Below are positions 44,601 through 64,000 of a DNA stretch of 64,000 nt, piece after piece (within the stretch, counting starts at the first letter, position 1; every line of letters begins with the position of its first letter). The stretch comes from Klebsormidium nitens (Eukaryota > Plantae > Klebsormidiophyceae), in assembly GCA_000708835.1 (NCBI GenBank), contig DF237366.1, positions 17,838 through 81,837 of the forward strand, written 5' to 3'. The notes below the pieces were generated by a model that saw only the letters and a program-made list of their open reading frames with translations, ran no database searches and was not told the DNA's origin. The position numbers and the translations under genes were made by a program.

Positions 44601-45285
44601 AGTGCGCAAGGATATGGTGAGGCAACCAGGGGTGCGTTTCTGCTTTTGCTTCCCGCTTTTAGCCCTGCTTGCTGTCAGCATCCATGTGCATCGAGCCATG
44701 TGTCCTGGTGAAAGGACACGGCGTCTCCGGCCTCTGGACCGGCAGAACGCGATCCTGATACAGTGCGGTCGTGTTCGGAATGCTTCCCGGTCTTCCATGG
44801 GAGGCGCCTTCTTTGGCCAGGGAAAGCAGCTAGCTCTAGCAGTGGTTCAAATTTCGTGTGCTGCAGTCGTGTTATATTGCTTGCCCTTTCGTGTGCGAGG
44901 GGGCTCAGCAAATGCGTGTTCTGGCACTGCAAGCATGTCTTTGTACGGACACTATACATGCATTTAGTAGACAGGAGGAAAACTCAGCTTGAGGGTCCTT
45001 ATTGGAACCAGAATGCACGTCCTGGGCTGCATACATGGCCCTCAGGATCTCCTATGACCGAGTATTTCGCTTCTCCCGGACTTGTCGGCAGCACCTCTTG
45101 TAGTTACACCCTATTCCTGTTTGTGCGGTTCAACATGGTGCATGTTTCTTGCAGGTATAAAGCTGGTTGACTATGGTGAAGAGGAGGAGGAGGAGAACTT
45201 CCGAGGAAGTGCAGGTCGGCCACCCCATCCTGGCCCGCAAGGTGGCCAAGGAGTCCAGCGACCTTTCTGGTATCCGCGTGGTTAA
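38695..45285 (+). CDS. RIK: RIK / KHDC4 (BLOM7)-like KH-domain RNA-binding splicing protein with a long P/Q/G/Y-rich tail; about 15 exons
   Basis: MEPKQDR|KKRKWDV; REIVINDAP..IRSQLTRRPVQEE|IQRETGSVIITR|GRYKAP..EKPLHLHISPG; ARIRGPN|NAYLDHISNESGAVLELRGRGSG; EPLQLVL..LDQAKKLANNLLDTI; the C-terminus is KLVDYGEEEEEE...PFWYPRG*. Confidence 0.88.
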
Positions 45286-46252
45286 CAAGGTCGTGAAAAA
45301 CCATTGTTGTTGGCAAGCCTGGGCGACTGGCAGAAAGACATCGTGCTAAGCAGGAAGTGGCTCTGAGGGTTCTTGCTGCTGTTCCGCTTCACGAATGTAC
45401 TGGATTCACCATCGAGCCATGACTCTTCTTATGAGTTTCGGGAAGGACTCATTCGATGAGTTCTCTTCCACTGTTCTTCTCATGCAGACTTTTCCTTAAA
45501 CGAAAAAAGGTGCCGTTTTAGCTAGGGCAAAGCTCAGCTGTCAAAGACAGTGAGTGCGTTGTTTGATGTTGACAGCCAAGCTTTAGAAGCTGCATCTTTA
45601 TGCGTATGCAGATTTCAAGTTGACGCTTTGCATGTTCTGCTCTTGTAATTCAGCGCGTTGCAGATCGTACTTACATATAATGTTTCGCATACGTTTTCAT
45701 GACTTGTATAAGACATGCAGACGATTAATATTCGTGCAAGTTTCAGATCGAGATAAAGGACCTCTAGACGTCGTCATTAGCTGCATATGTATCATTATGG
45801 CATACTGCATTCGTGATGCACCGCGACCCATTGCACATGTTGAAAGCATGTTATGAGCATATGTACGTTGCATTGAACGACTATCCGCCTCGAACAAAGC
45901 CATTACACGCACGTGAACCAGGGATCGAATGAACAGCCGCAAGACAGACAACAAGACGAAACATCAAGCAATTTAACGTGACCATCTTGTCTGCAAATCT
46001 TCTATCTGGGTTTTTCAAGTAAAAAGTGAAGTCAATATCAACCTTCTTGAAGGTAGTGACAAAGTGCTCGACAGCAACCAACTTTCACCGATTTGGTGCC
46101 TACTTTAGGTACAACTTTTTTGAATGTACCTTATAAGGTTAGAATCGACCCGGATTCTAAATTAGGAGAATGCAAGGGCCAGCGGCGTATGGTACAAGCT
46201 GTGGTGCGGATTGACTGGGTCGAAGAATGATGTGTCTCAACTTAGATATCTC

Positions 46253-49200
46253 TCATCTTCTCATGGGCCCCAGCGGTGGTGCTGGTTCAAGCGTGCTCGG
46301 CAGCACGCCAGCCCCGGCCAGCTCGATCTCTGTGAGCGCCTGTCCAATGTTGGAATTGTTCTTGGAGAGCGACCTCCTGGCCCGCCGGCCCAAGCCGCTA
46401 TCCTGCTGCGTGAAGCGCGCGGCGGGAGCCGGGGCGGGCATGGGCTCCGAATGGTGCGACACCATCAGGCGACCTGCGTCGTCCTGCTGCCACGTGACCT
46501 CCACCATGAGGCCGTTGGGGTAGTCGGCGCTCGCGGAGCCCGGCAGGGCCACATATGGTGCGCCAATGGGGACCTGCCAGCAAGCAGAACCGCAGTGAGT
46601 TGAAAGCAAAGGGACAAAGAGACAAAGCCAACACAAAGGAGGGTCTATTCGTGTGCAGCAGTGACTTCGTCAGGTCCTGAGACTTGCGGCGCTGCAGAGA
46701 CGGCTAGCACGGAGTTACAAATCATGCTTGCACGGCTGCGCTATCCCTACGGTGTAAACAGGCGTCGCACCTGCAGGGTGGTGCCGTCGCCAAGGGTGAT
46801 CTTGTCGTAGCGGCCCTCCGCCTGCGCGGTCTCCAGCTCGGCCTGGCGCGCGATGGCCAGGAACACCTCCTCCAGCGTGGACAGGCTCAGCTGAACGTCC
46901 GTCACGCCCAGCTCGCCGCGCCGCGCCTGCAGCGCCGCAAAGAACTCGGGCAGCACGCGCTCCGCGCTGCGCGGCACCAGGAACCGGATGTACGCCTTGC
47001 TCTCCTCCGCCGCCTCCACGCCCAGCCCCTGCAGCCACCGCCACGCAGTACCACGTCAGCGGCGTGCAGCTCACAGGAGAATGTGTGAACAATCTGTGGC
47101 ACGCCCTTAGCTGCAGCAAAACGGTACGGTGCTCTAACTCGAGGAGTTTGCGACAACAGAGCCGTTCTTGCAGAAGTTCAACCACCCACCTTGCACAGAT
47201 TGACTGCCTCAATCTGACACCCAACACAAGAGCGGGCGACATAGTAAGCAGCGGTGTGGCAGGTTACACGAGGCGTTACCTGCTTGAAGAAGGCCTTGAC
47301 GGCGTCGGCCTTGTGCGCGTCCGCCTCCCAGCTGGTGGCCCCGGGCAGGTCCACGTAGCTGCCCGCGGAGCGCACCGACACGTTCACGATGTAGCCCGCG
47401 CCGAACTTGTTCTTCAAGTGGATGCTGCTGCCGATGCACCGCATGCGCCCCTGCATCGCGCGCACACCCGCATTCAGCACGGCTCAACGGCAAGAATCCA
47501 GTGCTACAAGGAGGCTGGAAGTCACCGCCAAGACTCGAGAGGCTGCAGCAGGCCGCACGGCGCCTGCACATTTCTGTTGGGAAGCGCTCTACAAGCTGTG
47601 TGCGAAGCAACTTATGTCGTCACAAACAGAGCCGAGTAGCCGCCCCTATCGCGAGGAGCACGGCGGAGGTGCGTGGGGCGGGTGCGGACCTTGGCCATGA
47701 TGGCGATGGTGTCGCCCAGGATGTCGGCCTCCTCCATGGAGTGCGTCGTCAGGATGAAGGCGCGCCCCGGCTTGCACGCCTCGATGATGTCCCAAACATG
47801 CCGCCGCGAAATAGGGTCCATGCCCGTCGTCGGCTCGTCTAAGTACACCTGCACCACCCGGACCCGCGGCTCAGCCCCGAGCCAAAGCGTGCCCCTAGCA
47901 ACCAATCTGCAAGACATTGCTCCTACGCAGTGGTCTACAAACCGGAGCGAGCAGCGGGCCTGTGGGTCGGCGGAGGGCTCACCACTTTGGGGTCACCGAT
48001 GAGCGCGACGGCCACGCTGAGGCGGCGCTTCATGCCCCCGCTGTAGCTGGCGCTGCGCACGCCGCCCGCCTCCACCAGCCGCACCTGGGCCAGCAAGTCG
48101 TCCACCTCCTGCAACACAAGCAAGGACACCGTGAGGGGGAAAGGGAGATGGGGGAGGGAGACAACCCACCGAACAATACTGAGGAGGGGCTGAAGACCGC
48201 TAGGCACAAGGAAAAACAAGCTTGGAAAGCAAAGTTGAAACCCAAACCCGTGCTATCACCTGCTCCGCACCCGTACCCGCCCGGAAACCTCAACCTAACC
48301 CTACCTGCCGACGATTCTACTATCCTGAAGCGCACTATTCCTGGATTCTGTGATCTCGTCCAGACGGCGGCTCGAGTGGCTCTCCATGCGGCCAGCGCGC
48401 GCATGGCGGTGCGCGCCAATGCCAAGACGGTGGTTAGCCGCTTCACTAGACAGCATGTGCTTTAGCACGCCTTGTGTGTGCGGGGCTGACCTGTGCGACT
48501 TGCTGTTTGGGCAGGCCGCGGATGTTGGCGAAGAGCCAGAGGTGCTCTTTGCCCGTGAGGTCGCCCCACAGAATGTCGAACTGCGGGCACACGCCCATGA
48601 AGCTGCGCACGCGCGCCATGCCCGCCGCGTCTGTAATCTCGTTGTCGTACACCAGCGCACTGCCCGCCGTTGCTGGAAGCACGCCCGTCAGCATGTTGAT
48701 CGTCGTCGTCTTGCCCGCCCCTGCAGCCAACCGTTGCAAGCGCCGCACTTAGCATCAAGCAAAGAAGAACAAAGAGAGAGAAGAAAGGCCGACCGGGCGG
48801 AAAGAACATTGCTGACAGACAGGGGCAGAGATGTGGCGTCAAACACACTGGCGATGATGGGCAAAGTAACTGCCGGTCATCGCACGGCCTGCGCATGGCA
48901 CTCTAGCTCGAGTGGCTGCTTACCGTTGGGGCCCAGCAGACAGAAGAGCTTGTTCTCCTCGATGGTGAAGGACACGCCCTGCAGCGCACGCAGCCAGGGA
49001 GCCAGGTGTCAGCACTCAAGAGGACACGGCTCGAGGCGAGCAGGCACACGAGACACTGCTTAGCAGGCAAGGCAGACAAGGGTTTGGCCGGGGAGGGCGG
49101 CCGCGGCTGACCTTGACGGCGTGGAAGGGCGCGGTCGAGGTGCAGGTGCAGAAGCAGCAGTACTTGCACGAGCACGAGCGCGTGCCCGCAAACGTCTTGC

Positions 49201-52200
49201 GCAGGTTGCGCAGCTGCACGGAGGTGCCGGGGGGAGGTGCGCCTGCCTGCGCCTGCGCTTCCACCTGCCAGCCAAGAAGCACGGGGTCAGATAAGTAGAC
49301 TCTCAAAAAAGGAGGGGCTGGCAAGAGGAACGGGTAAAAGGCAGGCGCTTCACACCAGGGCGGTGAAGCGCCTGGTGTGAAGCCCCGAGCGCGGTAACAG
49401 CATCCTGTCCAGGGCTGTTTGCAAGTATAAACTACTACTGCAAGCGACCGTTGTTAAGACCAGCGCTTCTCCAGAGCTACAGGCTGCCAGGCATGTGGGG
49501 CCGACCTTCTCTCTCTCTGCCACGACGTCCTCGTCCTCTGGCCCGCTGGAGGGCGGCAGGGGCGGCTCGCGGCCGGTGCAGGAGCAGCAGCCGGTGGTGC
49601 CGGAGAAGCCGCCCTTGGAGCCGGTCCAGTACGAGGGGTAGAGGAAGAAGAGCCAGGGGCGGCGCACGCCGTTGACGTCCGGGAAGACGCGGTCCAGGTA
49701 CGTGGCCAGCAGCGTGTACAGCAAGAACTCCACGAACAAGTACTTGAAGCAGTTGCTCTGTACCGCGCACAATAACACAAACAGCCTCAGCCCACAGGGC
49801 GGCAGCGTTGACCACACTGCGTGTCAAGGCACACGGCCACAGCGAGGCACAAGAGGGTAACGGGTGACTGCTTTTCAATGGGGAACCTGCCTTGTCTTAG
49901 CAAAGGCCACGCAGGCAGAGTGAGGGAAAGCGTACCAGGGGGAAGACACAGTCGTCGTTGATACCCCCGAACGAGTTCCCTTTCCCGCAGTGGCTCGTGA
50001 TCTGGCTCCACTTGATGCCCCTGTCATCCTGCGGCACAGCAAGGCAACCATTTGTTCAACACCAAGGAGCAAGGCGAAAGCTCTGAAAGCCAGCGGGCGG
50101 AGTCGAAAAGCACACGAAAGCACGGCCGTCTTTGTCAAGGTGACAAGCAGGGGCGACAGTCATACCCACTCCAGTTGTTCTGAAAGCAGGCCCCCTGAGG
50201 GGGGAGGTCGAGGGGCAACAGGAGAACCAAAAAGATCGCTAGCAAAGAGGATCGAAGAGCCAAGTGCAACACAAAAGGCCGTGACCTTCCGTGGGTTGTG
50301 AGGAGTACCTTGGTGGCGGTGGCATCCCCCAGGTACTGGAGGCCAATGGCGAGCAGGTTGGGAGGGAAGAGGGACCAAAGGTAGCGGATCCAGGGCGCAA
50401 AGCTCTTGTCGTAGGGGAAGCCGAACGCAGTCACCAGCTGCACTAACAGCAGAGCGGGAGTCAGCCCAGCGCTGCAACTACCGCAAGCAGGACAGCCTGC
50501 TCAGTGCCAGGCGCGCAAGATGAAACATGCAACAGTTGGTAGGCTGTAACCGTCCCCTGCCGGCCAACAATTCCAGTTTAAGCTTGCAGTTTGAGAAGCA
50601 TCTCCTTTGCAGCACAGAGAGGCAGGAGGCGTGCCGGGAGAGCAACGGATGTGCCACGGACCTGGACGATGAACCCGAGGATGAAGATGAAGAAGCCCAG
50701 GGTGGTGGCGGGGGCAGACGACTGCAGGAACGTCGACGCCAGGAACGCCAGCCCCACCTGCAGTAGCACCGGCAGGGGGGGCGTCAGCGACAGCAGGGCA
50801 GTGAGTCACCGACAGCAGGCCGGGCGAGGTGAGACGGCAGGGTCCGGCCGGACTACGGGCCCAATGACCAGGAACAGGGTGCGGTGCTGCTCACACAGAG
50901 AACTTTAGAGCATCGTGGCGAGCAGGTAATGGCGCTGGGCAGAGTGTCTGGGCGGCAGCTTACCATGGCCAGCTCGAACAGGAAGAAGAGGATGAACAGG
51001 ACGAAGAAGCCGTTCCTCTTGAACAAGTCGAACTGCACACGGGGGAGATGCGGAGTCAAGAGCAGTGCACATGCGCCTCCCGCTGCAGTGAGGAGCCCCA
51101 GTCAACTATGTGCAGGGCGCTACAAGGTTCCCCAGGACACACTTGGGCTACGAACAACAAGCCACCGACAAAGTTAACAATCGGAGAAGCATTCGAGCAG
51201 CGAACCAAGCGCATGGCATGGGGCGCGTGGTTGGGGGAGTGGTCTTCTTGCCTGGAACATGAGGCCGAAGATGACGATGAAGAGGCTGGAGATGAAGACA
51301 AGGACGACCTCCCACGCGACCCAGGTGAGCCAGAACACCGACACCTTGAGGCCCATCGTGTCCATGGCCTGCCGCAGCTTCAGCTCGCGCTCCGCCACCA
51401 CCGCACCGATCTGGATCACAAACCCGAACATGGCTGCAACAGACACGAGAAACACACCACTGGGTCAGACACAGCACCCACCAGAAGGCAGCTGGAATGA
51501 GTCGCAGCAGCAGAATAAGGCCAAGATTCCTCGCCGGCCCACTGCAGGCCCACTGCAACGGGCCAGAGGTAATGTGCGTCATACCTGCCGCAAAGAGGAA
51601 GGTAGGCGCAACCGCCCCAGCCGCCGAGAAATTGGTGGTCGCAGGGTGGGCTGCACAGGATTACGAGGAGAAGGGGTGAGAAACAGCGGCGCAGGGGCCA
51701 GGGGCGCACGAGAGACAGGCAGGGGGCGCTACGGCGCACACTACAAAGAGGAGCCATGCTTAACTGGGCAATACAACAGCGTGGTACAGGCAGGATTCTG
51801 TGAACCAAGGAAATGATCCGCCAGCTTACCGAACTCCACCATCCATGTGTACCAATTGAGGGCAGGCCCATCTGCACCAGATTATCGAACGTGTTACTGT
51901 CAGCCAGGGGCCACCGTTGGTGGAGCTTGCACAAACAGGCCAGCATAGTGCAAGTTACACCGTGACGATGCTCATGAAACCTCGGAACTAGGATCAACGA
52001 TCGGGGCAGACACTGCTGGATTTCACGTCAAGCAATTAGAAGTCTGATATGCCTATGCCAAGGCAGCATTTATACAATCGTGGCCTTCACCTCAACATTA
52101 GCGCTCAACCAACACTGCTACTCCCTTGTAATGCAAGCCTGCTGAAGGAAGAGCATTGGGGCCGCATGCTCACCCCCCGTGACAAAGCGCACAATCTCCC

Positions 52201-53177
52201 TCTCCACTGCCTGCTGCAGCGGTGCCTGGAACTTGAAGTTGACGTCCTCGTACTGGCCGCGCTGGTTCTTGATGGTGGAGTTGACCTGCAGCCCGTAGCC
52301 CAGCCCCAGCGCTGTCTCCTGGAAGATGACCGCCGCAGGGGAGCGGCTCGGGTTGGCCAGCAGCCACGCGTCCACCTCCGCAGCGGAAGAGAAGGCGCGC
52401 ACCTGCACAAGGAGGCCGGCTCATGAGGACGCTGCAGGAAGATCAAGCGGTCCACATTTCAAAGCAATCACAAGCTAGGAACTCCAAGGAGTGGTATATG
52501 CGGACCTTCTCAGGTACAACACATGTGATGACAATGTGGTTACAACGGCTAGCTCCATGCCCCCAGCTGCGGCAGTGGCTCTAGATCTATCCCAAGTGGC
52601 GGCTCGAGGGTCACCTTCTCGGGGGGTATCGGCCTTCCGGGATTCTGCGCGCGCATGTTTCCCACAATTGTGTTCACCGAGGTGAGGTTGTTTGGCGCAT
52701 AGACGAAATCGTAGCATGGTTTCTTGATGTAGTAGCCAGTCTCGCATGCCGGCAGCGCCGGAATCAGAAAAGGCTCAGGCGTCCGCAGGCTCTTGAAGCC
52801 GGTGTTGCCCTTGTTCTGAGCATCGATGGCCTTGGCAACTGCAGGAAAAATGAAATCTCTACTGGGCTCGACCAAATTTCTTGATAAGAAGTAAGTGCCC
52901 AACCAAGATTGCACAGTTGGCCCAACCAGGACTGCCTTGCGGTTGGACACAAATGCAATGTACGCAGCTCCGTAGATCAACCCTCACCTATGAAGATCAG
53001 GAAGATGAAGAACAGCGACGACAAGAGCTGCAAAGCTGTTGCACGAGAGTTCCTCCAAGACAGAAGGACATTCTTCCAGAACAGTGCCTTGAACTGCTTT
53101 GCGAACAGCCGCCATCCTGTTGCCCTGGAGATAACTGGCACCGGAGCCGCCTGACGCTGGCTTTGATCGGCGTCCAT
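46253..53177 (-). CDS. ABCA2: Half-size ABCA transporter (TMD-NBD), plant ABCA2/ABCA9 subgroup; about 18 exons, one GC-AG intron
   Basis: [27 protein letters not shown]; [10 protein letters not shown]; [14 protein letters not shown]; WSLFPPN; Walker A GPNGAGKTT; [10 protein letters not shown]; signature [12 protein letters not shown]; [11 protein letters not shown]; TTHSMEEAD; the subgroup-specific tail [12 protein letters not shown]...[14 protein letters not shown]. Confidence 0.93.
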
Positions 53178-53516
53178 GGCTAAAAGCAAACACGAAACTG
53201 CAGCCCAAGCAGGCACACCAGCAGGCCTTCAAGTGCCCAACTGTGTTGCAGGGTTGCTTGCTCTAGCTGACAGATTGTTATAAGCGTGCAAAGCCGATGC
53301 CTGATCTAAACTGCATACTACTTTGAGGTTTGATCAAGTGGATAAATAGTGGCAGCCTAGGAGCGCCTTGGTCCTGAAAACCAGTGGCGGAGGCAGGAGC
53401 TGCAGCGACACCTCCCTGCATGGGCCTGCTGAAGCTGAGGCTCCGCCTGAAAGTTGAGTACGCCTGAGGCTGAGGCTGTAGATGTCCACAACTGCAAGGT
53501 CACAGCCAACTTCCAA

Positions 53517-53680
53517 GTACTCCTAAGCTACGGTAGCTACCTATTGTACTACAGTACCTACAGGCTACCTACAGCCTACAGGTACCTAGCCTGTAGGGAG
53601 CTACGGTACCACGGTAGCCTGTAGGTAGGTACCTACCTAGGTACCTTGCGCACGCTACTACCGTAGGTACCTACCGTACC
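53517..53680. repeat. GTAC/CTAC-rich nested inverted repeat in the ABCA-ABCA intergenic region
   Basis: 15-bp inverted repeat at 53555-53569 / 53613-53627, inner 8-bp inverted repeat at 53575-53582 / 53590-53597, 18-bp palindrome at 53622-53639, and 9 GTAC in about 165 bp. Confidence 0.8.
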
Positions 53681-53968
53681 TCAAACTCGCACCTGCTACA
53701 CTTGGTGAAATGTTAACCGGCAGCAGGTTCATGTCGGCAGTTGGCTATAAGTTACGGCTTTCCAAACCTGGGGGTAACGGTCAAGAAGCGACCGATAACA
53801 CTTGAAGTAGACGTCATCAGAAGCTGCGGCGAAGGTGCATTGATTCTGAACAGGTTTTACGGTAAATCAAGGCTCAAGCTGCAAGCCTGCAACCGTTGAT
53901 GTCCTAATGCTGCAGACTCCAGAGTGCTCGCAACAATTGTAATCCTAATTAGCTACTGCTGAAGTGAT

Positions 53969-54500
53969 NNNNNNNNNNNNNNNNNNNNNNNNNNNNNNNN
54001 NNNNNNNNNNNNNNNNNNNNNNNNNNNNNNNNNNNNNNNNNNNNNNNNNNNNNNNNNNNNNNNNNNNNNNNNNNNNNNNNNNNNNNNNNNNNNNNNNNNN
54101 NNNNNNNNNNNNNNNNNNNNNNNNNNNNNNNNNNNNNNNNNNNNNNNNNNNNNNNNNNNNNNNNNNNNNNNNNNNNNNNNNNNNNNNNNNNNNNNNNNNN
54201 NNNNNNNNNNNNNNNNNNNNNNNNNNNNNNNNNNNNNNNNNNNNNNNNNNNNNNNNNNNNNNNNNNNNNNNNNNNNNNNNNNNNNNNNNNNNNNNNNNNN
54301 NNNNNNNNNNNNNNNNNNNNNNNNNNNNNNNNNNNNNNNNNNNNNNNNNNNNNNNNNNNNNNNNNNNNNNNNNNNNNNNNNNNNNNNNNNNNNNNNNNNN
54401 NNNNNNNNNNNNNNNNNNNNNNNNNNNNNNNNNNNNNNNNNNNNNNNNNNNNNNNNNNNNNNNNNNNNNNNNNNNNNNNNNNNNNNNNNNNNNNNNNNNN
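53969..54500. other. Assembly gap (532 N) between the two ABCA genes
   Basis: A run of N in the input. Confidence 1.
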
Positions 54501-55186
54501 GTGATTGCAGGAGAATGTGACGGGAAAATGACGGTTTTGCTGCAGGAGAGGCATGCACCAACTGTGGCAACATGCCGGCGAAACGAGCGCTGACCACGTC
54601 AATGTAGGCCAGACACGTACCGGTACCAGGCGAGATTGCTTACGTACACAAATGGGCCGCAACTTCCTGCTTGGCCAACCGCACCGTTCAAGTTGCAAGT
54701 GGTTGTGCACGCCCGGCGCGTACCAGTTGGCAGTACGGTACTTACCGCGGGCGCGACACCGTCCTTGAACAATGCAACGATCGACCGTCGAAAAGCAACA
54801 GACCGGACCAACACGCTAATTACCTAGCCGGACAGTCGCAAATTGAATACCGTGCAGACTGTTACAGTCTACCTACCTACAGCTATTGCACAGCAGATGT
54901 GGGTGTCGTCCAGGACGGACTGGACATAGTTGCGTGGTGGCAGCAGTCTGATCAAGAGCGTTGGAAATTTGCAAGACGAACCGAAGGCTTGTGGAGCTGT
55001 AATTGAGTGTATGAATTAGCCTGTCGCTCTTGCATCCCCAGATTTATAAATACACCACCAGGAGCTTGGCAGTTGCTACGGCCACATTGCAAGCTGGCGG
55101 TGCATCAGTCGCGCCACGGCAACCCTCAGTTCAGCATCAATCTGTTCTTGATTTGATTGAGCCCGACTTGCTGCAGACCCACGGCC

Positions 55187-58100
55187 ATGGGCCGCAATGG
55201 GGATCGCGTCGAGGTGTTGCCAGGGCCTGCAGGCAGGGAGGATCGTGCTGCAGCGCTCCAGAGCACCTTCGGTGTCCAGGCCAACGCGATCATGCGCAAG
55301 AACTTTGTGTTCCAGAAGCGCAGCTGGGCCAACAACCTGTGCCTCCTGTTGACACCGGTGTTGCTGTGCGCGCTGCTGGGCATCCTGCAGGCGCTCATCA
55401 ACATTCTGCTGGACGGGGACAGCTTCAAGTGCGGCTGCAAGTGTATCGAGTTCAGCGCCTCCGACCCAACCGACTGCCTCAGACGGGACAAGAACATCTG
55501 CGGCCTGGAGTACTCGGATGTGGACCAGGCTGTCTACTGCCCCATCACCAGTCCGGCAGAGTGGCCAGCCCTCTTGCAGGTCAGATCGGTGCAGACGGAT
55601 TCAGATGGTGTCAAAAGCTCCCAGGTGGAAGCTGATGCCTTCCAGAAAATGGCAACTGTTGATGAGTATCAGCTGATTAAGATACTGTGGTGCTCTGCAT
55701 ATTCTTGTATTCTCTCTTGTCACTTGGGGTAACATGGCCCTTCGAGTTGCTTTGCAAAGTGCCTCAAAAGTTCGCCAGCTCAGGAGCTCTTCTCACCCTG
55801 CTTCTTGGTTGCGCGCAGGTGCCTTTGCCTGAGTACCGTGCAGAGGCCCCGGGCCTCCCTGTGGGCTGCCAAGCCTCCGGGAGCTGTCCGCTGGCGGTGC
55901 CGTTCACTGGCGGGAATCCAAGCCTGGCATATGGTGCGCTACCTCCTTCTGTTACACCACTGTTTGGCCCTTTCGATATGGCCATCAATGCTGCTGAAGT
56001 CAGTGCCCTGCAGCTTGTAATAGAGAGCGTACTGCCGCACTCCTCTGATCCTTCGTAGTGATTGCTGTGCCCGTTCTTGCAGATCTGAGCGCCCACCTGT
56101 TTCAGCCATCTCCGGCACCTCTGGTGCTGTCGGATGTGAACACCGCCCTGGCGAGCCAGTATCCAGGCACGGCAGCCCCTTCCTCGGGGACACTGCAGTA
56201 CGAGCTGGCCTTCCAGAATCGCTACGCGCTCTACTTTCTGCAAAACGACACCTGCCCCGCCAATGTCACACAGCTCCTGGCCCTTGGTCAAGCTGCAGCC
56301 GCCCCCATCTATAGCAGCTTTGGGATCAGCAACCCCCAGAGTGAGGGGATGCGCCTGCCTCTTGTCAGTCAAACAGGCACCAGGGCCTGTTCTGCTGCCC
56401 TTACGCTTGAGGATACAGTTCTCACCAACTCTATTCGGCCAATTTTGCCGACAATTCCCGCTTTCCTTCTAGCCCCCGATTGTAATCTTACCTCGTGTGC
56501 CTTTGTGCGTTCCCAGCTGCTGTGGTTGCCTTGTGGCTAAAGGTTATTCAGGGCGCTGCCTGTTGGCCCGCTTGTGTTGGCGCTCACCGCCTCTGCCTGC
56601 TGCAGATTGGACGTGCTCGCCAGCAGTTACGCTGTGGAACAGCAATGTTGCGTCAATCAATGAGCAGCTGTTTGTGGGGTACCGAGGGGGGAACCCGGAG
56701 CGCACCATCAGCGAGTACACAGCCGCGTACGACTGGCGCAACACGAGCACGTCCAACTTCGTGGTGGGCGTCCACTACAATAGCACCTACCAGAACAACA
56801 CGTCGGATGCGCCGCCCTCCATCATGCGCATCGCACGCCAGATCAACCTGGTGAGCCGCCTTGCCCACACCAGTGCTCCCACGCACGTTTGCTTGCAACG
56901 TTTGAGTGGTACTTGGGTCTGAAGGAAGCATTGCGAGCGTGGCCCAGAATTGGTGTGCGCAGACTGCGCACACGTGATAACAGGCACAGCCCTCCCAGTT
57001 TAACGTGTGCGGTCGCTATGGTGCGGTGGTGCAGGCGGCGCAGGCGTTCTTGCGGTGGCAGCGGCCGGGGGCGTCTTTGCCGCTGCTGTTTGTGAAGGAC
57101 ATGCCCAAGCCGGGGACGCGGCTGCGCCTCGACTTCTCGTCCCTGCTGGGCCCGCTGTTCTACATGTGGGTGTGGCAGATGCTGTACCCGGTGCTCCTGG
57201 CGTCGCTGGTGTACGAGAAGGAGAAGAACCTGCGCACCATGATGCGCATGCACGGCCTCACCGACCTGCCCTACTGGATCGTCATGTACACCTGGTGAGC
57301 ATCCGGGCACCGCCCTACGCTGCCTGACCTGAGAGCGTTCGCACCAGACTGGACACCCAGCCCAGAGAATGTCACCAGCTGGCGGGCGCTACTGATTCGG
57401 CTGCTTTGTGTTCGCCAAGGAGCATCGAGGAGGTCGGCTCCTTCTCCATTGCTTGGACGTATTCAGGACAAGGCGCACCTTCTTTCTGCGCTGCCTCACC
57501 TTGGGTGGCACTCATTTCGCCGAGAAGGAAAAGCTCCTTGTGGCGGCGGTGTAGAGCGGGCGTTCCGATTCTGTGCAGGTTTTTGGTGCTGAGCGTGGCG
57601 TACATGATCATCTTCATGGTGGTGGGGTCGGCCATCCAGCTCAAGTTCTTTTTGCTCAACGACTACGGCATCCAGATCATCTTCTACTTCGTCTTCCTCA
57701 ACAACCAGGTCGCGTGGACCTTCCTCACCGCCACCATCTTCTCCAAGACCAAGACCGCCACAGGTACTGCCCACTTACCGCACAAGCACAAACGGCTCGG
57801 CTGTGTGCTTGATAGCATGCAGGGCCGTTTGCATCCTCTCGGGCAAGCCGTCCTTCTTATCAAGCCCCTAATCGCCATGTCACGCACTGGAGTGCTGACC
57901 ACTTCCCTGGCTGAGCCTGTGTCCGCGTGCTTTCGTGTGCAGTGTGCGGGTACCTGTACGTGTTTGGCAGCGGGCTGCTTGGCCAGTTCCTGCTGCGCTT
58001 TTTCCTGGAGGACCCCACCTTCAACGGCAGCGGCATCTTCTTCCTGGAGTGGATCCCCTGCTTCGCGCTTTACCGCGGCCTCTACGAGTTTGCGCAAGCC

Positions 58101-60760
58101 GCCTTCATCGGCAACTACCAGGACGAGAGCGGCATGAAGTGGAGCGATCTGAGCGACAGCCAGAACGGGCTGGTCACCGCGCTGCTCATCCTGCTCATCG
58201 AGTGGGCCGTCTTCCTCCTCCTCGGCTTCTACTTCGACCAGGTGCGCGACCAGCGTCGGGCTCAAGAGCTCAGACGACCACTCTGTCGTGCAAAGCGAGG
58301 GACTGTGCACATCATTGTAGGCAGCTGTTCCCTCTTGCCCTGTCAAGGACACGCTGTTGCCTTACAAGGGGAACGTCCATGCCCGATCTTTGGATGGCTG
58401 TGCACCCTTCGAGATGGTGCTCTTTCTCCTCGTGCGGCGTCTCTTGACCCGCCCAGTCCCTGTTTCATGGGATATGTGCGGATCAAGGCTGGCCGCTCAC
58501 GTTTTGCTGCCGTGACTTGTGCAGGTGGTGTCCTCCGGCAGCGGGGTGAAGAAGCCGTGGCTGTTCTGCCTGGGCAAGCGCGGCACCCCCGCCCCCAAGG
58601 AGGCCGGCCGGCGCGCCAGTGCGGAGGTGGGCGTGGACATGGAGCGGCCGGACGTGGCCGCGGAGCGCGCCGCAGTGGCGCAGCTCAAGGACGGGACGGG
58701 CGGGAACGTGATCGTGTGCAAGAACCTGAACAAGGTCTTCCCCAGCCGCGACGGCAACCCGCCCAAGGTGGCCGTCAAGTCGCTCGCGCTCGCCGTGCCG
58801 CGCGGGGAGTGCTTCGGCATGCTGGGGCCCAACGGTGAGCCCCCCGCCCACGCAGCCGAGCGAGCAGCCTCCCGCCCAGTGTTGGCGCGGCTCGAGCCAG
58901 GTGTGCTCCACCATGTGATGACTGCAGGCAGGTTCGGCGGCTGACGTGCGTGGGGTGGGGCCGTGCAGGTGCGGGCAAGACGACGAGCATCAATATGATG
59001 GTGGGCTTCCTGCAGCCCAGCGCGGGGACGGCGCTCATCGAGGGGCTGGACATCCGCACCGACATGACCAAGATCTACTCCGTCATGGGCGTCTGCCCGC
59101 AGCACGAGTGAGCGCAGCCACCAAGCCGCTCTCACAGCCTTATCGGCATAGGCCATGCGCACGAGCCTGCTGCAGGCTTCCACAGCCAACTTGTCAGGGT
59201 TCTGGCACTGTCGTCTGGGCTGCTGAAGTCGTGGTTTTGTCGAGCTTTTCCAGCTGTGTTTGGTCCGTCCGCTGACGCTGGCCCACGCGCTGCAGTTTGC
59301 TGTGGGAGTCTTTGAGCGGGCGGGAGCACCTGCTGTTCTACGGGCGCCTGAAGAACCTGCGCGGCCCCGCGCTGCAAGCCGCCGTGGAGCGCTCCCTGCG
59401 CAGCGTCAACCTGTACGCAGGCGGCGTGGGCGACAAGCGCGCCGGGCAGTACAGCGGGGGCATGAAGCGCCGCCTCAGCGTCGCCATCTCGCTCATCGGG
59501 GACCCCCTCGTCGTGTGAGTACCCTGCCGCACCGCGCCTTCCTCGACTGCACTGGAACGAGGCCCCGCCTGCATACGTTGGGTCAAGAAGAGTCGTGTTG
59601 GGTGGTTGGCCATGCCGGCTCGTTGCGTGAAGTAGCGGCTGAGCGGCACTTGTACGATGCAGGTACATGGACGAGCCGAGTACGGGCTTGGACCCGGCAT
59701 CGCGCAACAACCTGTGGCAGGTCGTCAAGGACGCCAAGAAGGACCGGGCCATCATCCTCACGAGTGAGCCGCACACCCCCGCCCGGCGCATAAACCTACA
59801 GTCTCGACAGCTTCTGGTTACCACGGTTCTCTTCGCAAATGGAACTGAGGGCAAAGCCTGTTTCTGCTGCGCCCGACCGAGGTCTCGCCCATTCGATTTC
59901 TGCCCGCCGCGCACTTTAATCTTCAGGCTTTGTTCCCGGGCTTGACTCGGCCGGTGCTTGGGCTTTGCTGTGCAGCGCATTCGATGGAGGAGGCGGAGGT
60001 GTTGTGCGACCGGCTGGGCATCTTCGTGGACGGCCAGTTCCAGTGCATAGGCAACCCCAAAGAGGTCAGTCCCTGCGCCGCACCCGCCGCAAAAGCAACT
60101 CGCCAGCTCAGCCGGCAGCGCTTGGAAGGTTTTATCGCTGGGACTCCCGGGAAAGGCATACGGTTTGTGTACAAATATGTCGATGGATCAATAGCTCCTC
60201 AGCCAACGCCTGAAGCGGGTTTTGGTTGACCGCCTGTCCTGGTTCACTCATGCACTGCGTGGCGCGTGCAGTTAACCTCGCGCTATGGCGGGAGCTACGT
60301 GTTCAGCGTCACGACGGCCCCCCAGGAGATGGCCGCCGTGGGCGAGCTGGTGCATTCGCTGAGCCCCGGGGCGCGCCGCGTGTACGCCGTCTCGGGCACG
60401 CAGAGGTTCGAGCTGCCCACCGACGAGGTGAGCCGCCCGTCCGACCACCGCCACTGCATACCGGGCCGTCGCATTGTTCTGTTAACTCATGCACTGCTGC
60501 TATTGTCCGTCGCCCCTGGTGAAATTGAGCTCTTGGGGACTGCTCTTCTGGCCCGTTGCAGCTCGTGTGCCGCAGTCTGCGTGCTGGCAATGACTGCGGG
60601 GCTTGGCGTGCAGGTGGACCTGGCGAAGGTGTTTGCTGCAGTGGAGCGGGCGAAGGGGCGGCTGCAGATCCAGGCGTGGGGGATTGCCAACACGACGCTG
60701 GAGGACGTGTTCGTCAAGATTTCCAAGGAGGCGCAGCTGGGGGAACGCACGCTCTCATGA
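55187..60760 (+). CDS. ABCA7: Half-size ABCA transporter (TMD-NBD), plant ABCA3-8/ABCA7 subgroup; 14 exons
   Basis: QANAIMRKNFVFQKR; CGCKC..CGLEYS..DQAVYCPI..P.EWPALLQVP; SSLLGPLFYMWV..LVYEKEKNLRTMMRMHGL; ALYRGLYEF; GECFGMLGPNGAGKTT; [17 protein letters not shown]; YMDEPSTGLDP; HSMEEAEVLCDRLGIFVDG; WGIANTTLEDVFVKI. Confidence 0.94.
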
Positions 60761-62163
60761 GGCGGCCACCGCAGCAACGGCTCATGTAACATAGCTCCGT
60801 AGCCACGGAGAGGATCGAGCATTCTTTCAGGACTTCAGTACAGTTCCCACACTAATGGTAGCGAGCTGGTATGAGAAATAAGGGGTCACCGTCCTCAAGC
60901 CGATTCATGCAAGTTGCTGGGTATAGACAGGCACCGAAATGGCCTGTTATGAAGTTTCCGTTCTGATCCGAGTACATTTGTGGATTCAATGGGTTGTAGC
61001 TTGTTGCTATAAGTTAAGCCTATCTATGAACGCCTTTCAAACTCTAGCTTCGACGAGTATGCTTACCTTAGGCACAACCTTTAGTACAGACAACTGAAGC
61101 GCATCTCCGTTTGTTCATTCAATATGTGCTAACGTCTCCTGACTCGATCCTTATGGTTCACATTTACATTGTATCAACGTTAGTGACATACACTAGTGCA
61201 AACGCTGATGCGCGTGCACGCATAGAGAATCCGGAGGTGAAATATGCATGGCAAGCCCAGGGCCGCAAGGATCACGTGTTGAGATAATTGCGCATTGCAG
61301 AGTACAGTTTGCAGCATACTATAGATATCTAGCTGCTTTCAATTCCCATGCTATCAAGATTTCGCGGTGCGTACCATGTTCACAATTGTCTGCGCACACA
61401 TATGTGGCACGCGTTGCCATGTAAGCACATACGGGGCCACGCGCAAATATTGCCGCTGGAAATTGTAGTAACATGCACCGTCATGTGCGTGATATGTAAA
61501 AGTATAGATTCCAATTAACCAGCGCATGCGTTAATTGTCGTTGCAATCATGCATGTACACATGCAGTGAGGCCAGTGACATGCAGGAGTCGCGAACTTGA
61601 CGATTGGTACTGATCAAGCGCACACGAAATTCAAACATAGTATGATTGTGGACGTTTATAACGACATAGGCATGCCCCCTTTGGGATGTAGAAATTGTCG
61701 ATACATTTAAGCCGGTCATCAGTGATAGCTTTGTATTTAACTTATAATAAGCGGCCGAAGCTTGAGCCCCGTCATGTGCATGACTCGTTTTACTCGGATA
61801 GTGTTGATCTTACATGATCGAATCGAGAAAACTTGCCGCGGCAGCCATGCACTGCAGCAACATTGGAGGCAGACTGGTTTGTATCAACAGGTAGCTAGCC
61901 TGCGTCGGTCTACCTAATTGTGCATCTGACGCGGTTGAGCGTCTCATGGCAGAACTTATCAGGAAATGTGTTTTATACAATTGCACTAAGCCAACCACAG
62001 ATGACGTTTCACTTGAGGCCTGTATCTGCCAGATTATCAAAGTCGATTCCATGTTTACTCCAGGTTACAATATGCTTGTTTTGAGGTGCATTTTGTCACG
62101 ACTTAGGTACAGTGCGACCATTTTTGGTCACGGTCTATGTGTCTATGTATGTGTTTTCAATTG

Positions 62164-63613
62164 CTACAAATATTTCCTTTCACTCTCCTGAATTGGGTAG
62201 TCATTCGCAGACATATCCCGCCGTCGCATCAAGCCTTCGTCATCAAATTCCCAGTGCTGTAAGGAAAGCATCCGATCACAATCACTTTCATTTTCGATGG
62301 GCATTGTTCTACAGGATTGCAAGCATCACTTACAGCATGTACAACAAATCGGACCTTCTTGACAAACTTACTTGACGGGTCAGCATGGCATGCCTCTGAG
62401 GTATTTGCACTTGGCCCAACATGTGTACTCTTTTCATGCCCTTGGATCTACTTCTTGCTTCCTATCCTGCATTTCACTGTGTCCAAGCCATGTACAGCAC
62501 TGTGCCAGAAGGAGGAATTTGCCTGGTCGATTCAAATTGGGCTTCACCTTGACAACATGTGAGCTCTGGCTACAGGACAACTTGGACCAAGCATGGGTGA
62601 GAGGCCGGATTCTGGCTCACCTCGTTGCCGTGTGCTCTGAACCACTGCCCAGAGTCGTCATGATACTCGTACTCAAATCGGACACTGATCCGGTTTCCCT
62701 GCACCATAAAATTCACAGGCCAAGTCAAACTCAACCCGTTGTTTGTATGAGGCAAGGGCAATGCAGCTGAAGGCTCTCCACCTGCACCCCCAGCCCTGAG
62801 CTGCGGCTGGCTCCACTTTCTGGTTGTGCTTGTGCGGGCGCCTGAGCCAGCCCTCTTCCCCTGGAGTGTCCTGCCTGGCGCACCTGGTAGCACCACAGCT
62901 CCTTCATCAGCTTGTAGTCCAGCTCCTTCTGCCACTTGCGCGTCAGAAATTCCTTGATGGCGGGCCGCCCTGTAAAGAACTCAGTGCGGTTGCGCCACTC
63001 GGAGTCGGGGGTGTAGGCCAAGGAGACGCGATGTGGGTCCTTGGAGTTCCACGCATTCTCAGCGGCTTTCACCTGTCACGGGTTCAAGAAAGATATGCAG
63101 ATTGACAAAATGTCGATCCATCATTCCTTGAAACGATCAACCCCTGCCGGGAGATTTGCGAGTCAATGGGAAGCGCTATTTTTCATGTTCAGAAATGCAA
63201 CCGGCAAGTATTGCTTAAAACACGTCACTACATGTGAGGGCAAATGCAATGTTGCTCTCCAAGAAGTCCATTGTGGCGACGGAGGAAAGAGGGCTGGTAT
63301 CGAATATATACATCAGTCAGGTTTCTTCTCAGAGAAAGGATCAATGCACCATCATGCAATGCAAGATTTATTCCTTTCAATCCTCCAGAATGTTCGATAA
63401 GAATTTTGCAACAGAATGCTGCCAATGTCCATTCCATCTGGTGCTTCACCAAATGCTGCGCTCGGCTTGCTGGGCATCTGCAAGAGCTCAAGCTCAGCCG
63501 CAGGCAGAGTTCCCCGGTCCACTGTCTGTCAGGAGGAGCAGACTTACCTTGGCAAGGGCGGTCTCAAGAGTGAAAGGCGGCTTGATGGGAGGTGGCACCG
63601 TGGGCTGCTCCAT
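62164..63613 (-). CDS. DUF1348 / SnoaL-like (NTF2-fold) protein; exons 63613-63548, 63072-62884, 62698-62621, 62256-62164; 141 aa
   Basis: The spliced product is [22 protein letters not shown]|[63 protein letters not shown]|[26 protein letters not shown]|[30 protein letters not shown]. These are typical DUF1348 motifs, and all introns are phase 0 GT-AG. Confidence 0.9.
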
Positions 63614-64000
63614 TCTAAAAACTCAGTTTATCTGAGATTTCGTGGAGGATTCATTGGATTCTTAGAAGAAGCGCTGAGCTCTGTGAAATGCCTCGAAAAA
63701 GCGGAGGAGGCTCGTACTAAATTATAGGGTGGTCACATTTGGATCCTTGAACTTGAAAAGTGTACTGTGTTGGCGCATCGGCCCCCAAGGGTGCGTACCG
63801 AGTCCCGACCCTAGGAACCCATTTTGATCATATTGACATTTGGGGTCGCTCGGACGGACGGCTAACACTTTCCGGTTTTGTAGGTGCGGAGGCTCGGTAG
63901 GGTACTGTGCGCTCCGACCCTAGAAAACTTTTCGAGGTTCCGGGGATCGGTCGGCTCCATATTCCCTATAAAATTTATATAAATGTTGCGACGTGAAATT

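What the first reader, a model, noticed from the sequence alone, without database searches (positions are those of the whole stretch)
46253..60760. Head-to-head pair of half-size ABCA transporters from two different subgroups: candidate ancient obligate heterodimer
Seen in sequence: two TMD-NBD half transporters are transcribed divergently, with ATGs about 2 kb apart (53177 and 55187, including a 532-N gap). They are not a recent tandem duplicate. One has the ABCA2/9-type N-terminus and VEVTWQQD tail, the other has the Cys-rich ABCA3-8/7-type exoplasmic loop and the WGIANTTLEDVF tail. Both keep intact Walker A, signature, Walker B and H-loop motifs. Established: half ABC transporters must dimerise, and full-size ABCAs consist of two dissimilar halves. 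Recalled and needing verification: in Arabidopsis, ABCA2 (At3g47730) lies next to ABCA3-8, and ABCA9/ABCA11 lie next to ABCA10/ABCA12. Inference: one gene from each subgroup may have stayed linked head-to-head from algae to angiosperms because they encode the two halves of one co-expressed lipid transporter. The literature mostly treats these as independent genes.
Basis: partly seen in the sequence, partly recalled or inferred. Interest (0 to 1): 0.8.

Follow-up and report, generated by a model that had tools for sequence, protein, structure and literature searches.

The report
Split ABCA lipid transporter gene pair
Two neighbouring, oppositely transcribed genes in this green alga each encode half of an ABCA lipid pump; one matches the front half and the other the back half of full-length ABCA pumps, and plants as distant as Arabidopsis keep the same arrangement, so the two halves very likely work together as one transporter, although this has not been shown directly.

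Summary
Gene A (minus strand, ATG 53177, stop 46253, 19 exons, about 1014 aa) is an ABCA2/9/11-type half transporter (Pfam ABCA11_C). Gene B (plus strand, ATG 55187, stop 60760, 14 exons, 971 aa) is an ABCA3-8/10/12-type half transporter (ABCA12_C). Both keep all ATPase motifs, and spliced RNA contigs from three studies cover both.

The N gap lies in the spacer between the two 5' UTRs, not in coding sequence. No contig bridges it, so adjacency here rests on the scaffold.

New evidence:
- In trees of the membrane domain, the ATPase domain and both together, A-type halves group with the N-terminal halves of full-size ABCAs and B-type halves with the C-terminal halves (UFBoot 100, SH-aLRT 99).
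- An AU test rejects a single half-size clade (p 1e-4).
- Three natural full-size proteins are A-N/B-C fusions.
- The same head-to-head A/B pair occurs in Closterium, Arabidopsis, Cardamine and Vitis, and was duplicated as a unit in Brassicaceae.
- It was not found near the Marchantia genes, one Ceratodon B gene, or in Chlamydomonas, where published data still show about 1:1 co-expression.

Best reading: a split ABCA transporter working as an A/B heterodimer (about 0.6). Physical pairing is untested. The scan had noted this same stretch once before (s1-324347).

The parts
46253..53177 (-). Gene A coding region: A-type (ABCA2/9/11-like) half-size ABCA transporter, about 1014 aa, 19 exons. Exons: 53177-52988, 52838-52615, 52402-52174, 51871-51830, 51650-51585, 51433-51252, 51032-50964, 50757-50662, 50437-50309, 50028-49936, 49757-49506, 49264-49112, 48978-48924, 48720-48491, 48108-47983, 47848-47690, 47450-47280, 47028-46771, 46573-46253.
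   Evidence: Exons 1-3 are confirmed by spliced RNA contigs. The rest come from spliced alignment to five orthologues, which agree except at 49936/49757. The intron after 51252 is GC-AG. The RNA contigs were laid 10 nt past the canonical donor at 52174; both readings stay in frame.
55187..60760 (+). Gene B coding region: B-type (ABCA3-8/10/12-like) half-size ABCA transporter, 971 aa, 14 exons. Exons: 55187-55579, 55819-55933, 56083-56340, 56606-56850, 57035-57294, 57579-57763, 57943-58241, 58525-58834, 58969-59107, 59296-59514, 59663-59763, 59976-60064, 60272-60427, 60614-60760.
   Evidence: Exons 1-6 are confirmed by spliced RNA contigs in three runs. Exons 7-14 come from spliced alignment to the moss orthologue P0382; all are GT-AG and the frame is open to a single stop.
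53178..53481 (-). 5' UTR of gene A (minimum extent). One run's contig reaches the gap edge at 53968.
   Evidence: RNA contig pieces 52988-53481 (X9, X13) and 52988-53968 (X5).
54967..55186 (+). 5' UTR of gene B (minimum extent). One run's contig starts at 54610.
   Evidence: RNA contig pieces start at 54967 (X9), 54970 (X13) and 54610 (X5).
53482..54966 (.). Shared divergent spacer, a candidate bidirectional promoter. It is at most about 1.5 kb between the transcript ends and includes the assembly gap.
   Evidence: No ORF in it had a protein match in the local tblastn of the fetched ABCA proteins.
53969..54500 (.). Assembly gap (532 N, length estimated). It is intergenic and was not bridged.
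   Evidence: One search shows loose ends beyond both edges in DNA run X1 and in X5/X13, and no spanning record.
47690..49264 (-). Gene A nucleotide-binding domain (exons 12-16). Walker A 48933-48704 (split by an intron), Q-loop 48595-48575, signature 48045-48016, Walker B 47985-47816 (split by an intron), H-loop 47752-47723. An A-type Cys-rich insert lies at 49180-49142.
   Evidence: motif mapping; ABC_tran; insert conserved in the A-type consensus.
58525..60064 (+). Gene B nucleotide-binding domain (exons 8-12). Walker A 58825-58985 (split by an intron), Q-loop 59088-59296 (split), signature 59450-59479, Walker B 59510-59693 (split), H-loop 59757-59998 (split).
   Evidence: (ABC_tran).
46253..47028 (-). 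Gene A C-terminal regulatory-type domain (ABCA11_C) and the long tail that holds VEVTWQQD (46504-46481).
   Evidence: (PF25158, E 4e-12).
60272..60760 (+). Gene B C-terminal domain (ABCA12_C, related to the R domain that follows NBD2 in full-size ABCAs) and the tail that holds WGIANTTLEDVF (60677-60712).
   Evidence: PF24526, E 7.5e-20; the same family hits the C-terminal R domain of P0003..

Best explanation
The locus encodes a split ABCA lipid transporter. Gene A supplies the TMD1-NBD1-type half and gene B the TMD2-NBD2-type half. The two are transcribed divergently from a short shared spacer, so they are made together. They assemble into an A/B heterodimer that is the functional equivalent of a full-size ABCA, with two canonical ATP sites and a composite exoplasmic domain built from two unlike loops. 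By analogy with the studied orthologues (AtABCA9 and CrABCA2 for A, AtABCA10 for B), the likely job is ATP-driven movement of fatty acids, acyl-CoA or lipids at the ER for glycerolipid and TAG synthesis.

Shown here: gene structures, subgroup membership, intact motifs, transcription of both genes, N-half/C-half homology, natural fusions, and conserved head-to-head synteny.

Inferred: physical heterodimerisation, the shared promoter, substrate and location.
For: 1. Subgroups. Single exons hit ABCA11_C (A) and ABCA12_C (B) above Pfam cut-offs. WIN_A nests in the streptophyte ABCA2/9/11 clade and WIN_B in the ABCA3-8/10/12 clade (100/100).
2. Half homology. The split {full-size N-halves + A-type halves} against {full-size C-halves + B-type halves} has SH-aLRT 89 on NBDs alone, 95 on TMDs alone, UFBoot 100 / SH-aLRT 99 on both together, and 99 after adding named animal, insect, oomycete and ciliate ABCAs. 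Forcing all half-size proteins into one clade costs 42.5 lnL (p-AU 9.9e-5).
3. Natural fusions. P0003 (a Cavostelium transcript), P0011 and P0006 are continuous full-size ORFs. Their N-halves sit inside the A group and their C-halves inside the B group.
4. Synteny. The same divergent A/B pair occurs in Arabidopsis (1.8 kb spacer), Closterium (1.8 kb), Vitis (9.2 kb) and Cardamine ABCA9 (0.7 kb). Locus tags are adjacent or nearly so in Adiantum, Ulmus and Ginkgo. In Brassicaceae the A paralogues and their B neighbours each form a lineage-specific clade, so the pair was copied as a unit.
5. Expression. Both genes are covered by spliced RNA contigs in the same three studies, with similar contig depth, which the tool itself calls a poor measure of expression. 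In Chlamydomonas the orthologues CrABCA4 (A) and CrABCA5 (B) are 0.5 Mb apart yet co-vary, with r 0.99 reported under starvation and near-equal abundance (PMC9605142). I computed r 0.91 (log-scale 0.95) and a mean ratio of 1.22 over 28 diurnal points.
6. Structure. A predicted B-type structure (Marchantia orthologue) aligns best to the C-half of ABCA4, ABCA1, ABCA7 and ABCA3 (Z 28.5-33.6; rmsd 3.4-4.4 in six of the nine top rows). N-half alignments score lower and have rmsd 10-15.
Against:
- Both NBDs are fully canonical, so nothing in the sequences forbids homodimers.
- Linkage is lost or loose in Marchantia, in one Ceratodon B copy, in Chlamydomonas and in a dictyostelid.
- Arabidopsis is said to have 3 A-type and 8 B-type genes (from the paper's subgroup lists, PMC9605142 and PMC3823996), so many B copies lack a private partner.
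- Single-gene overexpression or knock-out of ABCA9, CrABCA2 and ABCA10 gives phenotypes that the literature interprets without a partner (PMC6999713, PMC9605142). A soybean B-type is reported as peroxisomal (PMC8879324).
- Pairwise sequence matches to human ABCAs do not separate N from C. The A-type model matches both halves, with Z 33.7 for the ABCA3 N-half and 31.4 for the ABCA4 C-half.
- Earlier papers place half-size ABCA NBDs as a whole nearer NBD2 (PMC4649718, PMC2984421).
- Adjacency in this genome crosses an unbridged gap.
Confidence: 0.6

Rival explanations
1. The two are independent homodimeric transporters. A and B each pair with themselves and handle different substrates or membranes. 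The head-to-head arrangement persists only because a shared bidirectional promoter co-regulates two genes of the same lipid pathway.
For: Both NBDs are canonical, so homodimers would have two working ATP sites. The literature treats ABCA9, CrABCA2 and ABCA10 as acting alone (PMC6999713, PMC9605142). Different locations are reported for a B-type (peroxisome, PMC8879324) and for ABCA9 (ER). Linkage is lost in several lineages without loss of either gene.
Against: This reading does not explain why one class is specifically N-half-like and the other C-half-like in both TMD and NBD. It also does not explain why natural fusions always join A-type in front of B-type, or why the unlinked Chlamydomonas genes keep about 1:1 co-expression.
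Confidence: 0.22
2. The pairing is facultative or combinatorial. The ancestral A/B heterodimer exists, but B-types (and perhaps A-types) also form homodimers or swap partners, especially where B genes have multiplied, so the heterodimer is not obligate.
For: Arabidopsis is said to have 3 A-type and 8 B-type genes (PMC9605142, PMC3823996). Tandem B arrays lie next to ABCA2. CrABCA7, a second B-type, also tracks CrABCA4 at lower abundance (r 0.71).
Against: In this alga the window shows one A and one B as a pair. Other copies elsewhere in the genome were not surveyed.
Confidence: 0.15
3. The adjacency in this genome is a scaffolding artefact. The two genes lie on different contigs that were joined wrongly across the N gap.
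For: No DNA or RNA contig bridges 53969-54500, and the loose ends on the two sides do not overlap.
Against: The join recreates exactly the divergent A/B arrangement seen on contiguous sequence in Closterium, Arabidopsis, Cardamine and Vitis. A (CA)n run at the gap edge gives an ordinary reason for an assembly break.
Confidence: 0.03

Closest known systems
Arabidopsis ABCA2/ABCA9/ABCA11 (ATH1/11/15) and Chlamydomonas CrABCA2 (renamed CrABCA4): A-type half-size ABCAs
   Same: Gene A carries the ABCA11_C domain, the same N-terminus, the Cys-rich NBD insert and the VxWxQDD tail. It nests in this clade. The family is tied to ER fatty-acid supply for TAG synthesis (PMC6999713, PMC9605142).
   Different: Gene A is an early-branching streptophyte-alga member. 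No function has been tested for it.
Arabidopsis ABCA3-8, ABCA10, ABCA12 (the ATH 2-7 group) and CrABCA1/5/7: B-type half-size ABCAs
   Same: Gene B carries the ABCA12_C domain, the Cys-rich exoplasmic loop and the AWGxAxTTLEDVF tail. It nests in this clade.
   Different: The window shows a single copy beside A rather than a tandem array.
Full-size ABCA transporters (human ABCA1, ABCA3, ABCA4, ABCA7; plant AOH/ABCA1)
   Same: Same fold (Z about 30 to solved structures). A groups with TMD1-NBD1 and B with TMD2-NBD2. Both ATP sites are canonical, as in ABCA1 and ABCA4 (that comparison is from my own knowledge).
   Different: The two halves are encoded by separate, divergently transcribed genes, and the exoplasmic domains are much smaller.
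Human ABCG5/ABCG8 (sterolin) gene pair
   Same: Two half transporters from head-to-head genes with a short shared spacer, working as an obligate heterodimer in lipid transport (from my own knowledge). This is the best analogy for how the locus may work.
   Different: A different subfamily with reversed NBD-TMD order. ABCG5/8 has one degenerate ATP site, whereas here both are canonical. The heterodimer is proven there and inferred here.
Natural A-B fusion ABCAs (P0003 of Cavostelium apophysatum; P0011 and P0006 of unknown protists)
   Same: The N-half lies in the A group and the C-half in the B group in NBD, TMD and combined trees.
   Different: They are one polypeptide and come from organisms outside the green lineage.

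Membership tests
ABCA subfamily (type V ABC fold, forward TMD-NBD) | ABC2_membrane_3-type TMD followed by an ABC_tran NBD, with a long exoplasmic loop between TM1 and TM2 | tested here: met
   Pfam hits on exons of both genes. The models place about 190 aa (A) and about 330 aa (B) between the first hydrophobic helix and the TMD core. Orthologue models match ABCA structures at Z about 30.
ABCA subfamily | Intact Walker A, Q-loop, signature, Walker B with catalytic Glu, and H-loop | tested here: met
   All five motifs were found in both genes and mapped to window coordinates.
A-type half-size ABCA (ABCA2/9/11) | C-terminal ABCA11_C domain (PF25158) above the curated cut-off | tested here: met
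   window:46747-47019:- scores 46.1 bits against a cut-off of 27.
A-type half-size ABCA (ABCA2/9/11) | Placement inside the clade in a phylogeny | tested here: met
   WIN_A groups with 8 plant A-types at 100/100, and at 98 on the NBD alone.
B-type half-size ABCA (ABCA3-8/10/12) | C-terminal ABCA12_C domain (PF24526) above the curated cut-off | tested here: met
   window:60266-60450:+ scores 71.2 bits against a cut-off of 34.8.
B-type half-size ABCA (ABCA3-8/10/12) | Placement inside the clade in a phylogeny | tested here: met
   WIN_B groups with 8 plant B-types at 100/100.
Split equivalent of a full-size ABCA | One half homologous to TMD1-NBD1 and the other to TMD2-NBD2 | tested here: met
   Split support is 89 (NBD), 95 (TMD), 100/99 (both) and 99 with named taxa. 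AU p is 9.9e-5 against one half-size clade. Structure agrees for B and is mixed for A. Pairwise HMMER is not decisive.
Head-to-head heterodimeric half-transporter pair (ABCG5/ABCG8-like system) | Divergent adjacent genes with a short spacer, conserved across species | tested here: met
   Seen in the window (across an unbridged gap), Closterium, Arabidopsis, Cardamine and Vitis. Not universal.
Head-to-head heterodimeric half-transporter pair (ABCG5/ABCG8-like system) | Co-expression at matched levels | tested here: inconclusive
   Here only contigs were available, which cannot rank expression. The Chlamydomonas orthologues co-vary at about 1:1 in published data.
Head-to-head heterodimeric half-transporter pair (ABCG5/ABCG8-like system) | Physical heterodimer, with each half non-functional alone | not testable with these tools
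   No multimer prediction or experiment was available. No paper in the library reports an interaction test.

The most novel reading that the evidence does not exclude
The two classes of half-size ABCA transporters of plants, algae and several protists are the unfused N- and C-halves of the ancestral eukaryotic ABCA machine and work only as A/B heterodimers. Under this reading, the functions published for single genes (ABCA9, ABCA10, CrABCA2) describe halves of one ER lipid importer, and the divergent gene pair with its shared spacer is an expression unit kept since before land plants arose.
Probability: 0.4. Interest if true: 0.8.

Novelty: new variant of a known kind. Interest (0 to 1): 0.7.

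Why it matters
Plant and algal half-size ABCA transporters are engineering targets for seed and algal oil, yet their functional unit has never been defined. In the papers I could search they are treated gene by gene.

If A-type and B-type halves are the two halves of one machine, three things follow:
- Single-gene overexpression and knock-out results need re-reading.
- Co-expression of the right pair should outperform either gene alone.
- Heterologous reconstitution, which has been lacking, should be attempted with pairs.

For evolution, the result gives living representatives of both partners in the 'heterofusion' origin proposed for full-size ABCAs (PMC2984421, PMC4649718). It also refines the published view that half-size ABCAs as a whole sit near NBD2. 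Finally, the pair is a rare case of microsynteny and gene orientation kept from a streptophyte alga to angiosperms.

Tried and rejected
1. The representatives search with a two-sequence NBD-exon profile returned mostly full-size ABCAs, because two NBDs sum their scores. It did not return the window's own proteins, but it did yield the A-B fusion P0003.
2. A naive codon-bias exon chainer over-extended exons and missed RNA-proven splices. I replaced it with a protein-guided spliced aligner, then allowed GC donors.
3. A MAFFT alignment of exon fragments against P0003 piled the fragments onto the NBD. I did not use it as a query.
4. The window's own full-length proteins never appeared in the three word searches.
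They were not sent to any search or folding tool. Marchantia orthologues P0268 and P0410 stood in for PDB and fold searches, and the step 'search or fold the joined window proteins' was left out.
6. PDB sequence search did not separate N from C halves.
7. Structure comparison was clear for B only.
8. Two context look-ups found no record (P0257, P0409). Amborella and Adiantum had no neighbour within the 10 kb reach.
9. The ABCA10 paper (PMC9070825) is not held, so abca9 and abca10 phenotypes could not be compared at source.
10. A recent tandem duplication was rejected: 32% identity and AU p 1e-4.

Full report
**What is in the sequence**

The region is GC-rich (about 60%) and full of introns. 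On the minus strand, ORF pieces from 53177 down to 46253 hit ABC2_membrane_3, ABC_tran and ABCA11_C (PF25158; 46.1 bits, cut-off 27). On the plus strand, pieces from 55187 to 60760 hit ABC2_membrane_3, ABC_tran and ABCA12_C (PF24526; 71.2 bits, cut-off 34.8).

**The gap, tested first**

Contigs from one DNA run (the probable source sample) and three spliced, hence RNA-derived, runs from three other studies were laid on 52000-57900.
- The RNA contigs give GT-AG joints for A exons 1-3 and B exons 1-6. Translation across those joints is open.
- A's transcript reaches at least 53481 and B's begins at or before 54967. The gap at 53969-54500 therefore lies in the spacer between the two 5' UTRs and touches no reading frame.
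- Nothing bridges the gap. Contigs end at 53968 and run on into a (CA)n stretch. Contigs begin at 54501 preceded by unrelated letters.
- Adjacency in this assembly is therefore a scaffold inference. I accept it because contiguous sequence in four other species shows the same arrangement (see Synteny).
- Contig depths for A and B are similar in all three RNA runs (361/296, 129/151, 303/298). The tool warns that contig depth is a poor measure of expression, so I use this only as evidence that both genes are transcribed.

**Gene models**

A first codon-bias chainer failed. Using liverwort, fern, gymnosperm, Closterium and Arabidopsis A-types, and a moss B-type, it gave consistent models.
- A has 19 exons and about 1014 aa, with one GC-AG intron after 51252.
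- B has 14 exons and 971 aa.
- One A junction is uncertain by 10 nt. The RNA pieces were laid to 52164, while the canonical donor is at 52174. Both readings are in frame, and the canonical one restores a conserved Gly-Asp.
- The boundary at 49936/49757 in A differs between guides.
- All five ATPase motifs are intact in both proteins. A and B share only 32% identity.

**Relatives**

The single representatives search returned mainly full-size ABCAs. A local tblastn of those against the window then showed something unexpected. In P0003 (1761 aa) and P0011 (2005 aa), the N-half matches gene A specifically, including A's N-terminus and its ABCA11_C region. The C-half matches gene B specifically, including B's tail.

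P0003 is a Trinity transcript of the amoebozoan Cavostelium apophysatum.
- Its N-half retrieves plant ABCA2/9/11 proteins and half-size proteins of Balamuthia and dictyostelids.
- Its C-half retrieves protist halves, animal ABCA3 and ABCA5, and a moss B-type.
- The moss B-type retrieves the land-plant ABCA7/8-like family.

**Phylogeny**

NBDs and the 300 residues upstream of them (the TMD core) were cut from the window models, 25 plant halves, 25 non-plant halves and up to 35 full-size proteins.

| Data set | Rows | Split {N-halves + A-types} vs {C-halves + B-types} |
|---|---|---|
| NBD only | 122 | SH-aLRT 89 |
| TMD only | 97 | SH-aLRT 95 |
| TMD + NBD, careful LG+C20 search (555 columns) | 64 | UFBoot 100 / SH-aLRT 99 |
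| TMD + NBD with named animal ABCA3/5/17-like, insect, mollusc, oomycete and ciliate proteins | 72 | SH-aLRT 99 |

- The A group, including the N-halves of P0003 and P0011, has 98/94 support. The B group, including their C-halves, has 100/99.
This costs 42.5 log-likelihood units (p-AU 9.9e-5).
- WIN_A is sister to Closterium plus land-plant A-types, and WIN_B is sister to land-plant B-types.

Earlier papers proposed that full-size ABCAs arose by 'heterofusion' of two distinct halves, but they place half-size NBDs as a whole nearer NBD2 (PMC2984421, PMC4649718). A Chlamydomonas survey reports the two half-size branches (PMC9605142). I found no paper in the library that equates one branch with the N-half or proposes A/B heterodimers. 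The library lacks most subscription journals, so prior statements elsewhere cannot be excluded.

**Orthogonal checks on the N/C assignment**

- Sequence search of the Marchantia A and B orthologues against solved human ABCAs hits both halves, with no consistent preference.
- The predicted Marchantia B-type structure (pLDDT 76) aligns best to C-halves. Its nine top ABCA rows are all C-half, at Z 28.5-33.6, with rmsd 3.4-4.4 in six of them. N-half rows start at Z 27.4 with rmsd about 10-15.
- The Marchantia A-type model (pLDDT 81) is mixed. The ABCA3 N-half scores Z 33.7 and the ABCA4 C-half Z 31.4, although most rows are N-half.
- Structure therefore supports B = C-half and is neutral for A.

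**Synteny**

Gene-context look-ups gave the following.

| Species and gene | Neighbour |
|---|---|
| Arabidopsis ABCA2 | B-type (932 aa) 1.8 kb upstream on the opposite strand, followed by another B-type |
| Closterium A-type | B-type (1055 aa) 1.8 kb upstream, opposite strand |
| Vitis A-type | B-type about 9.2 kb upstream, opposite strand |
| Cardamine ABCA9 | B-type (915 aa) 0.7 kb upstream, opposite strand |
| Marchantia A and B | no partner within 10 kb |
| Ceratodon, one B copy | no partner within 10 kb |
| Amborella A | no partner within 10 kb |
| Dictyostelid A-like gene | no partner within 10 kb |

- Locus tags are adjacent or nearly so in Adiantum, Ulmus and Ginkgo, and eleven apart in Riccia.
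- In Chlamydomonas the published coordinates put CrABCA4 and CrABCA5 0.52 Mb apart on chromosome 14.
- In Brassicaceae the A paralogues and their respective B neighbours each form a lineage-specific clade (100 each). The pair was therefore duplicated as a unit and kept its orientation.

**Expression in a relative**

PMC9605142 reports that CrABCA5 follows CrABCA4 with r = 0.99 under N or S starvation and has nearly equal abundance. From its supplementary diurnal series I computed r = 0.91 (log scale 0.95) and a mean ratio of 1.22. The full-size CrABCA2 does not correlate. The pair thus stays matched in expression even where physical linkage is gone.

**Interpretation**

The most economical reading is a split ABCA transporter. 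A supplies the N-type half and B the C-type half, the two are co-expressed from a shared spacer, and they assemble as a heterodimer. The arguments are the half-specific homology in two independent domains, the mirrored tree shapes, three natural A-front/B-back fusions, synteny and orientation conserved from a streptophyte alga to angiosperms, duplication of the pair as a unit, and matched expression in a chlorophyte. The probable role, ER fatty-acid or lipid transport, is borrowed from studied orthologues and was not tested here.

Against an obligate pairing:
- Both NBDs are canonical.
- Linkage is lost in bryophytes and Chlamydomonas.
- B genes outnumber A genes in Arabidopsis.
- Single-gene phenotypes are reported, and locations differ between reports.
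- There is no interaction experiment.

I put the heterodimer at about 0.6, independent homodimers with shared regulation at about 0.22, promiscuous pairing at about 0.15, and a scaffolding artefact at about 0.03.

**Novelty and score**

The genes are ordinary members of known families. What appears new is the N-half/C-half assignment of the two plant classes, the natural fusions, and the deep conservation of the divergent pair. The whole resembles ABCG5/ABCG8 in logic but lies within ABCA and has two active ATP sites. I file it as a new variant of a known kind, with interest 0.7. It turns an unasked question about the functional unit of plant ABCA half transporters into a direct experiment.

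Noticed in passing
window 53530-53680: A cluster of short inverted and direct repeats rich in GGTACC and CTACAGG lies inside or just upstream of gene A's 5' UTR. A second, unrelated 4.5-kb contig of the DNA run matched two arms of it, so the motif is probably dispersed in the genome.
   Followed up: partly
window 53968 and 54501 (gap edges): Contigs run past the left gap edge into a (CA)n microsatellite followed by unique letters, and arrive at the right edge from unrelated letters. The microsatellite is a likely cause of the assembly break.
   Followed up: partly
window 53482-53968 and 54610-54966: In one 2024 RNA study, contigs extend from both genes through the spacer up to (A side) or near (B side) the gap. 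This is far beyond the 5' ends seen in the other two studies. It could reflect longer 5' UTR isoforms, promoter-upstream transcripts or DNA carry-over.
   Followed up: no
window 51252/51032: Gene A has a GC-AG intron, with the donor GC right after 51252. A GT-only model invents a 7-nt micro-exon here.
   Followed up: yes
window 49142-49180: A Cys-rich insert (13 residues, 7 of them Cys) sits in gene A's NBD between the first strands. The A-type family consensus has a shorter GCC...PFHAVKG version, and the Cavostelium fusion has Cys residues there too. Its role is unknown.
   Followed up: partly
P0153, P0165, P0176 (protist proteins): Some non-plant A-like halves of 1355-1505 aa carry an extra PhoD-like phosphatase domain (PF09423) according to the precomputed Pfam column. 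This would be a lipid or phosphate enzyme fused to an ABCA half.
   Followed up: no
P0385, P0386, P0388, P0393 (Brassica proteins): Brassica gene models of 1600-1700 aa with B-type domains look like merged tandem B-B neighbours rather than real full-size transporters.
   Followed up: no
same genome, other windows (earlier findings s1-337150, s1-305646): Other readers noted a full-size ABCA in this genome with degenerate ATPase motifs. It may matter for how many ABCA machines this alga has.
   Followed up: no
window 44000-46200 and 60800-64000: GC content falls from about 60% inside the two genes to 45-50% in the flanks on both sides, so the pair stands out as a GC-rich island.
   Followed up: no
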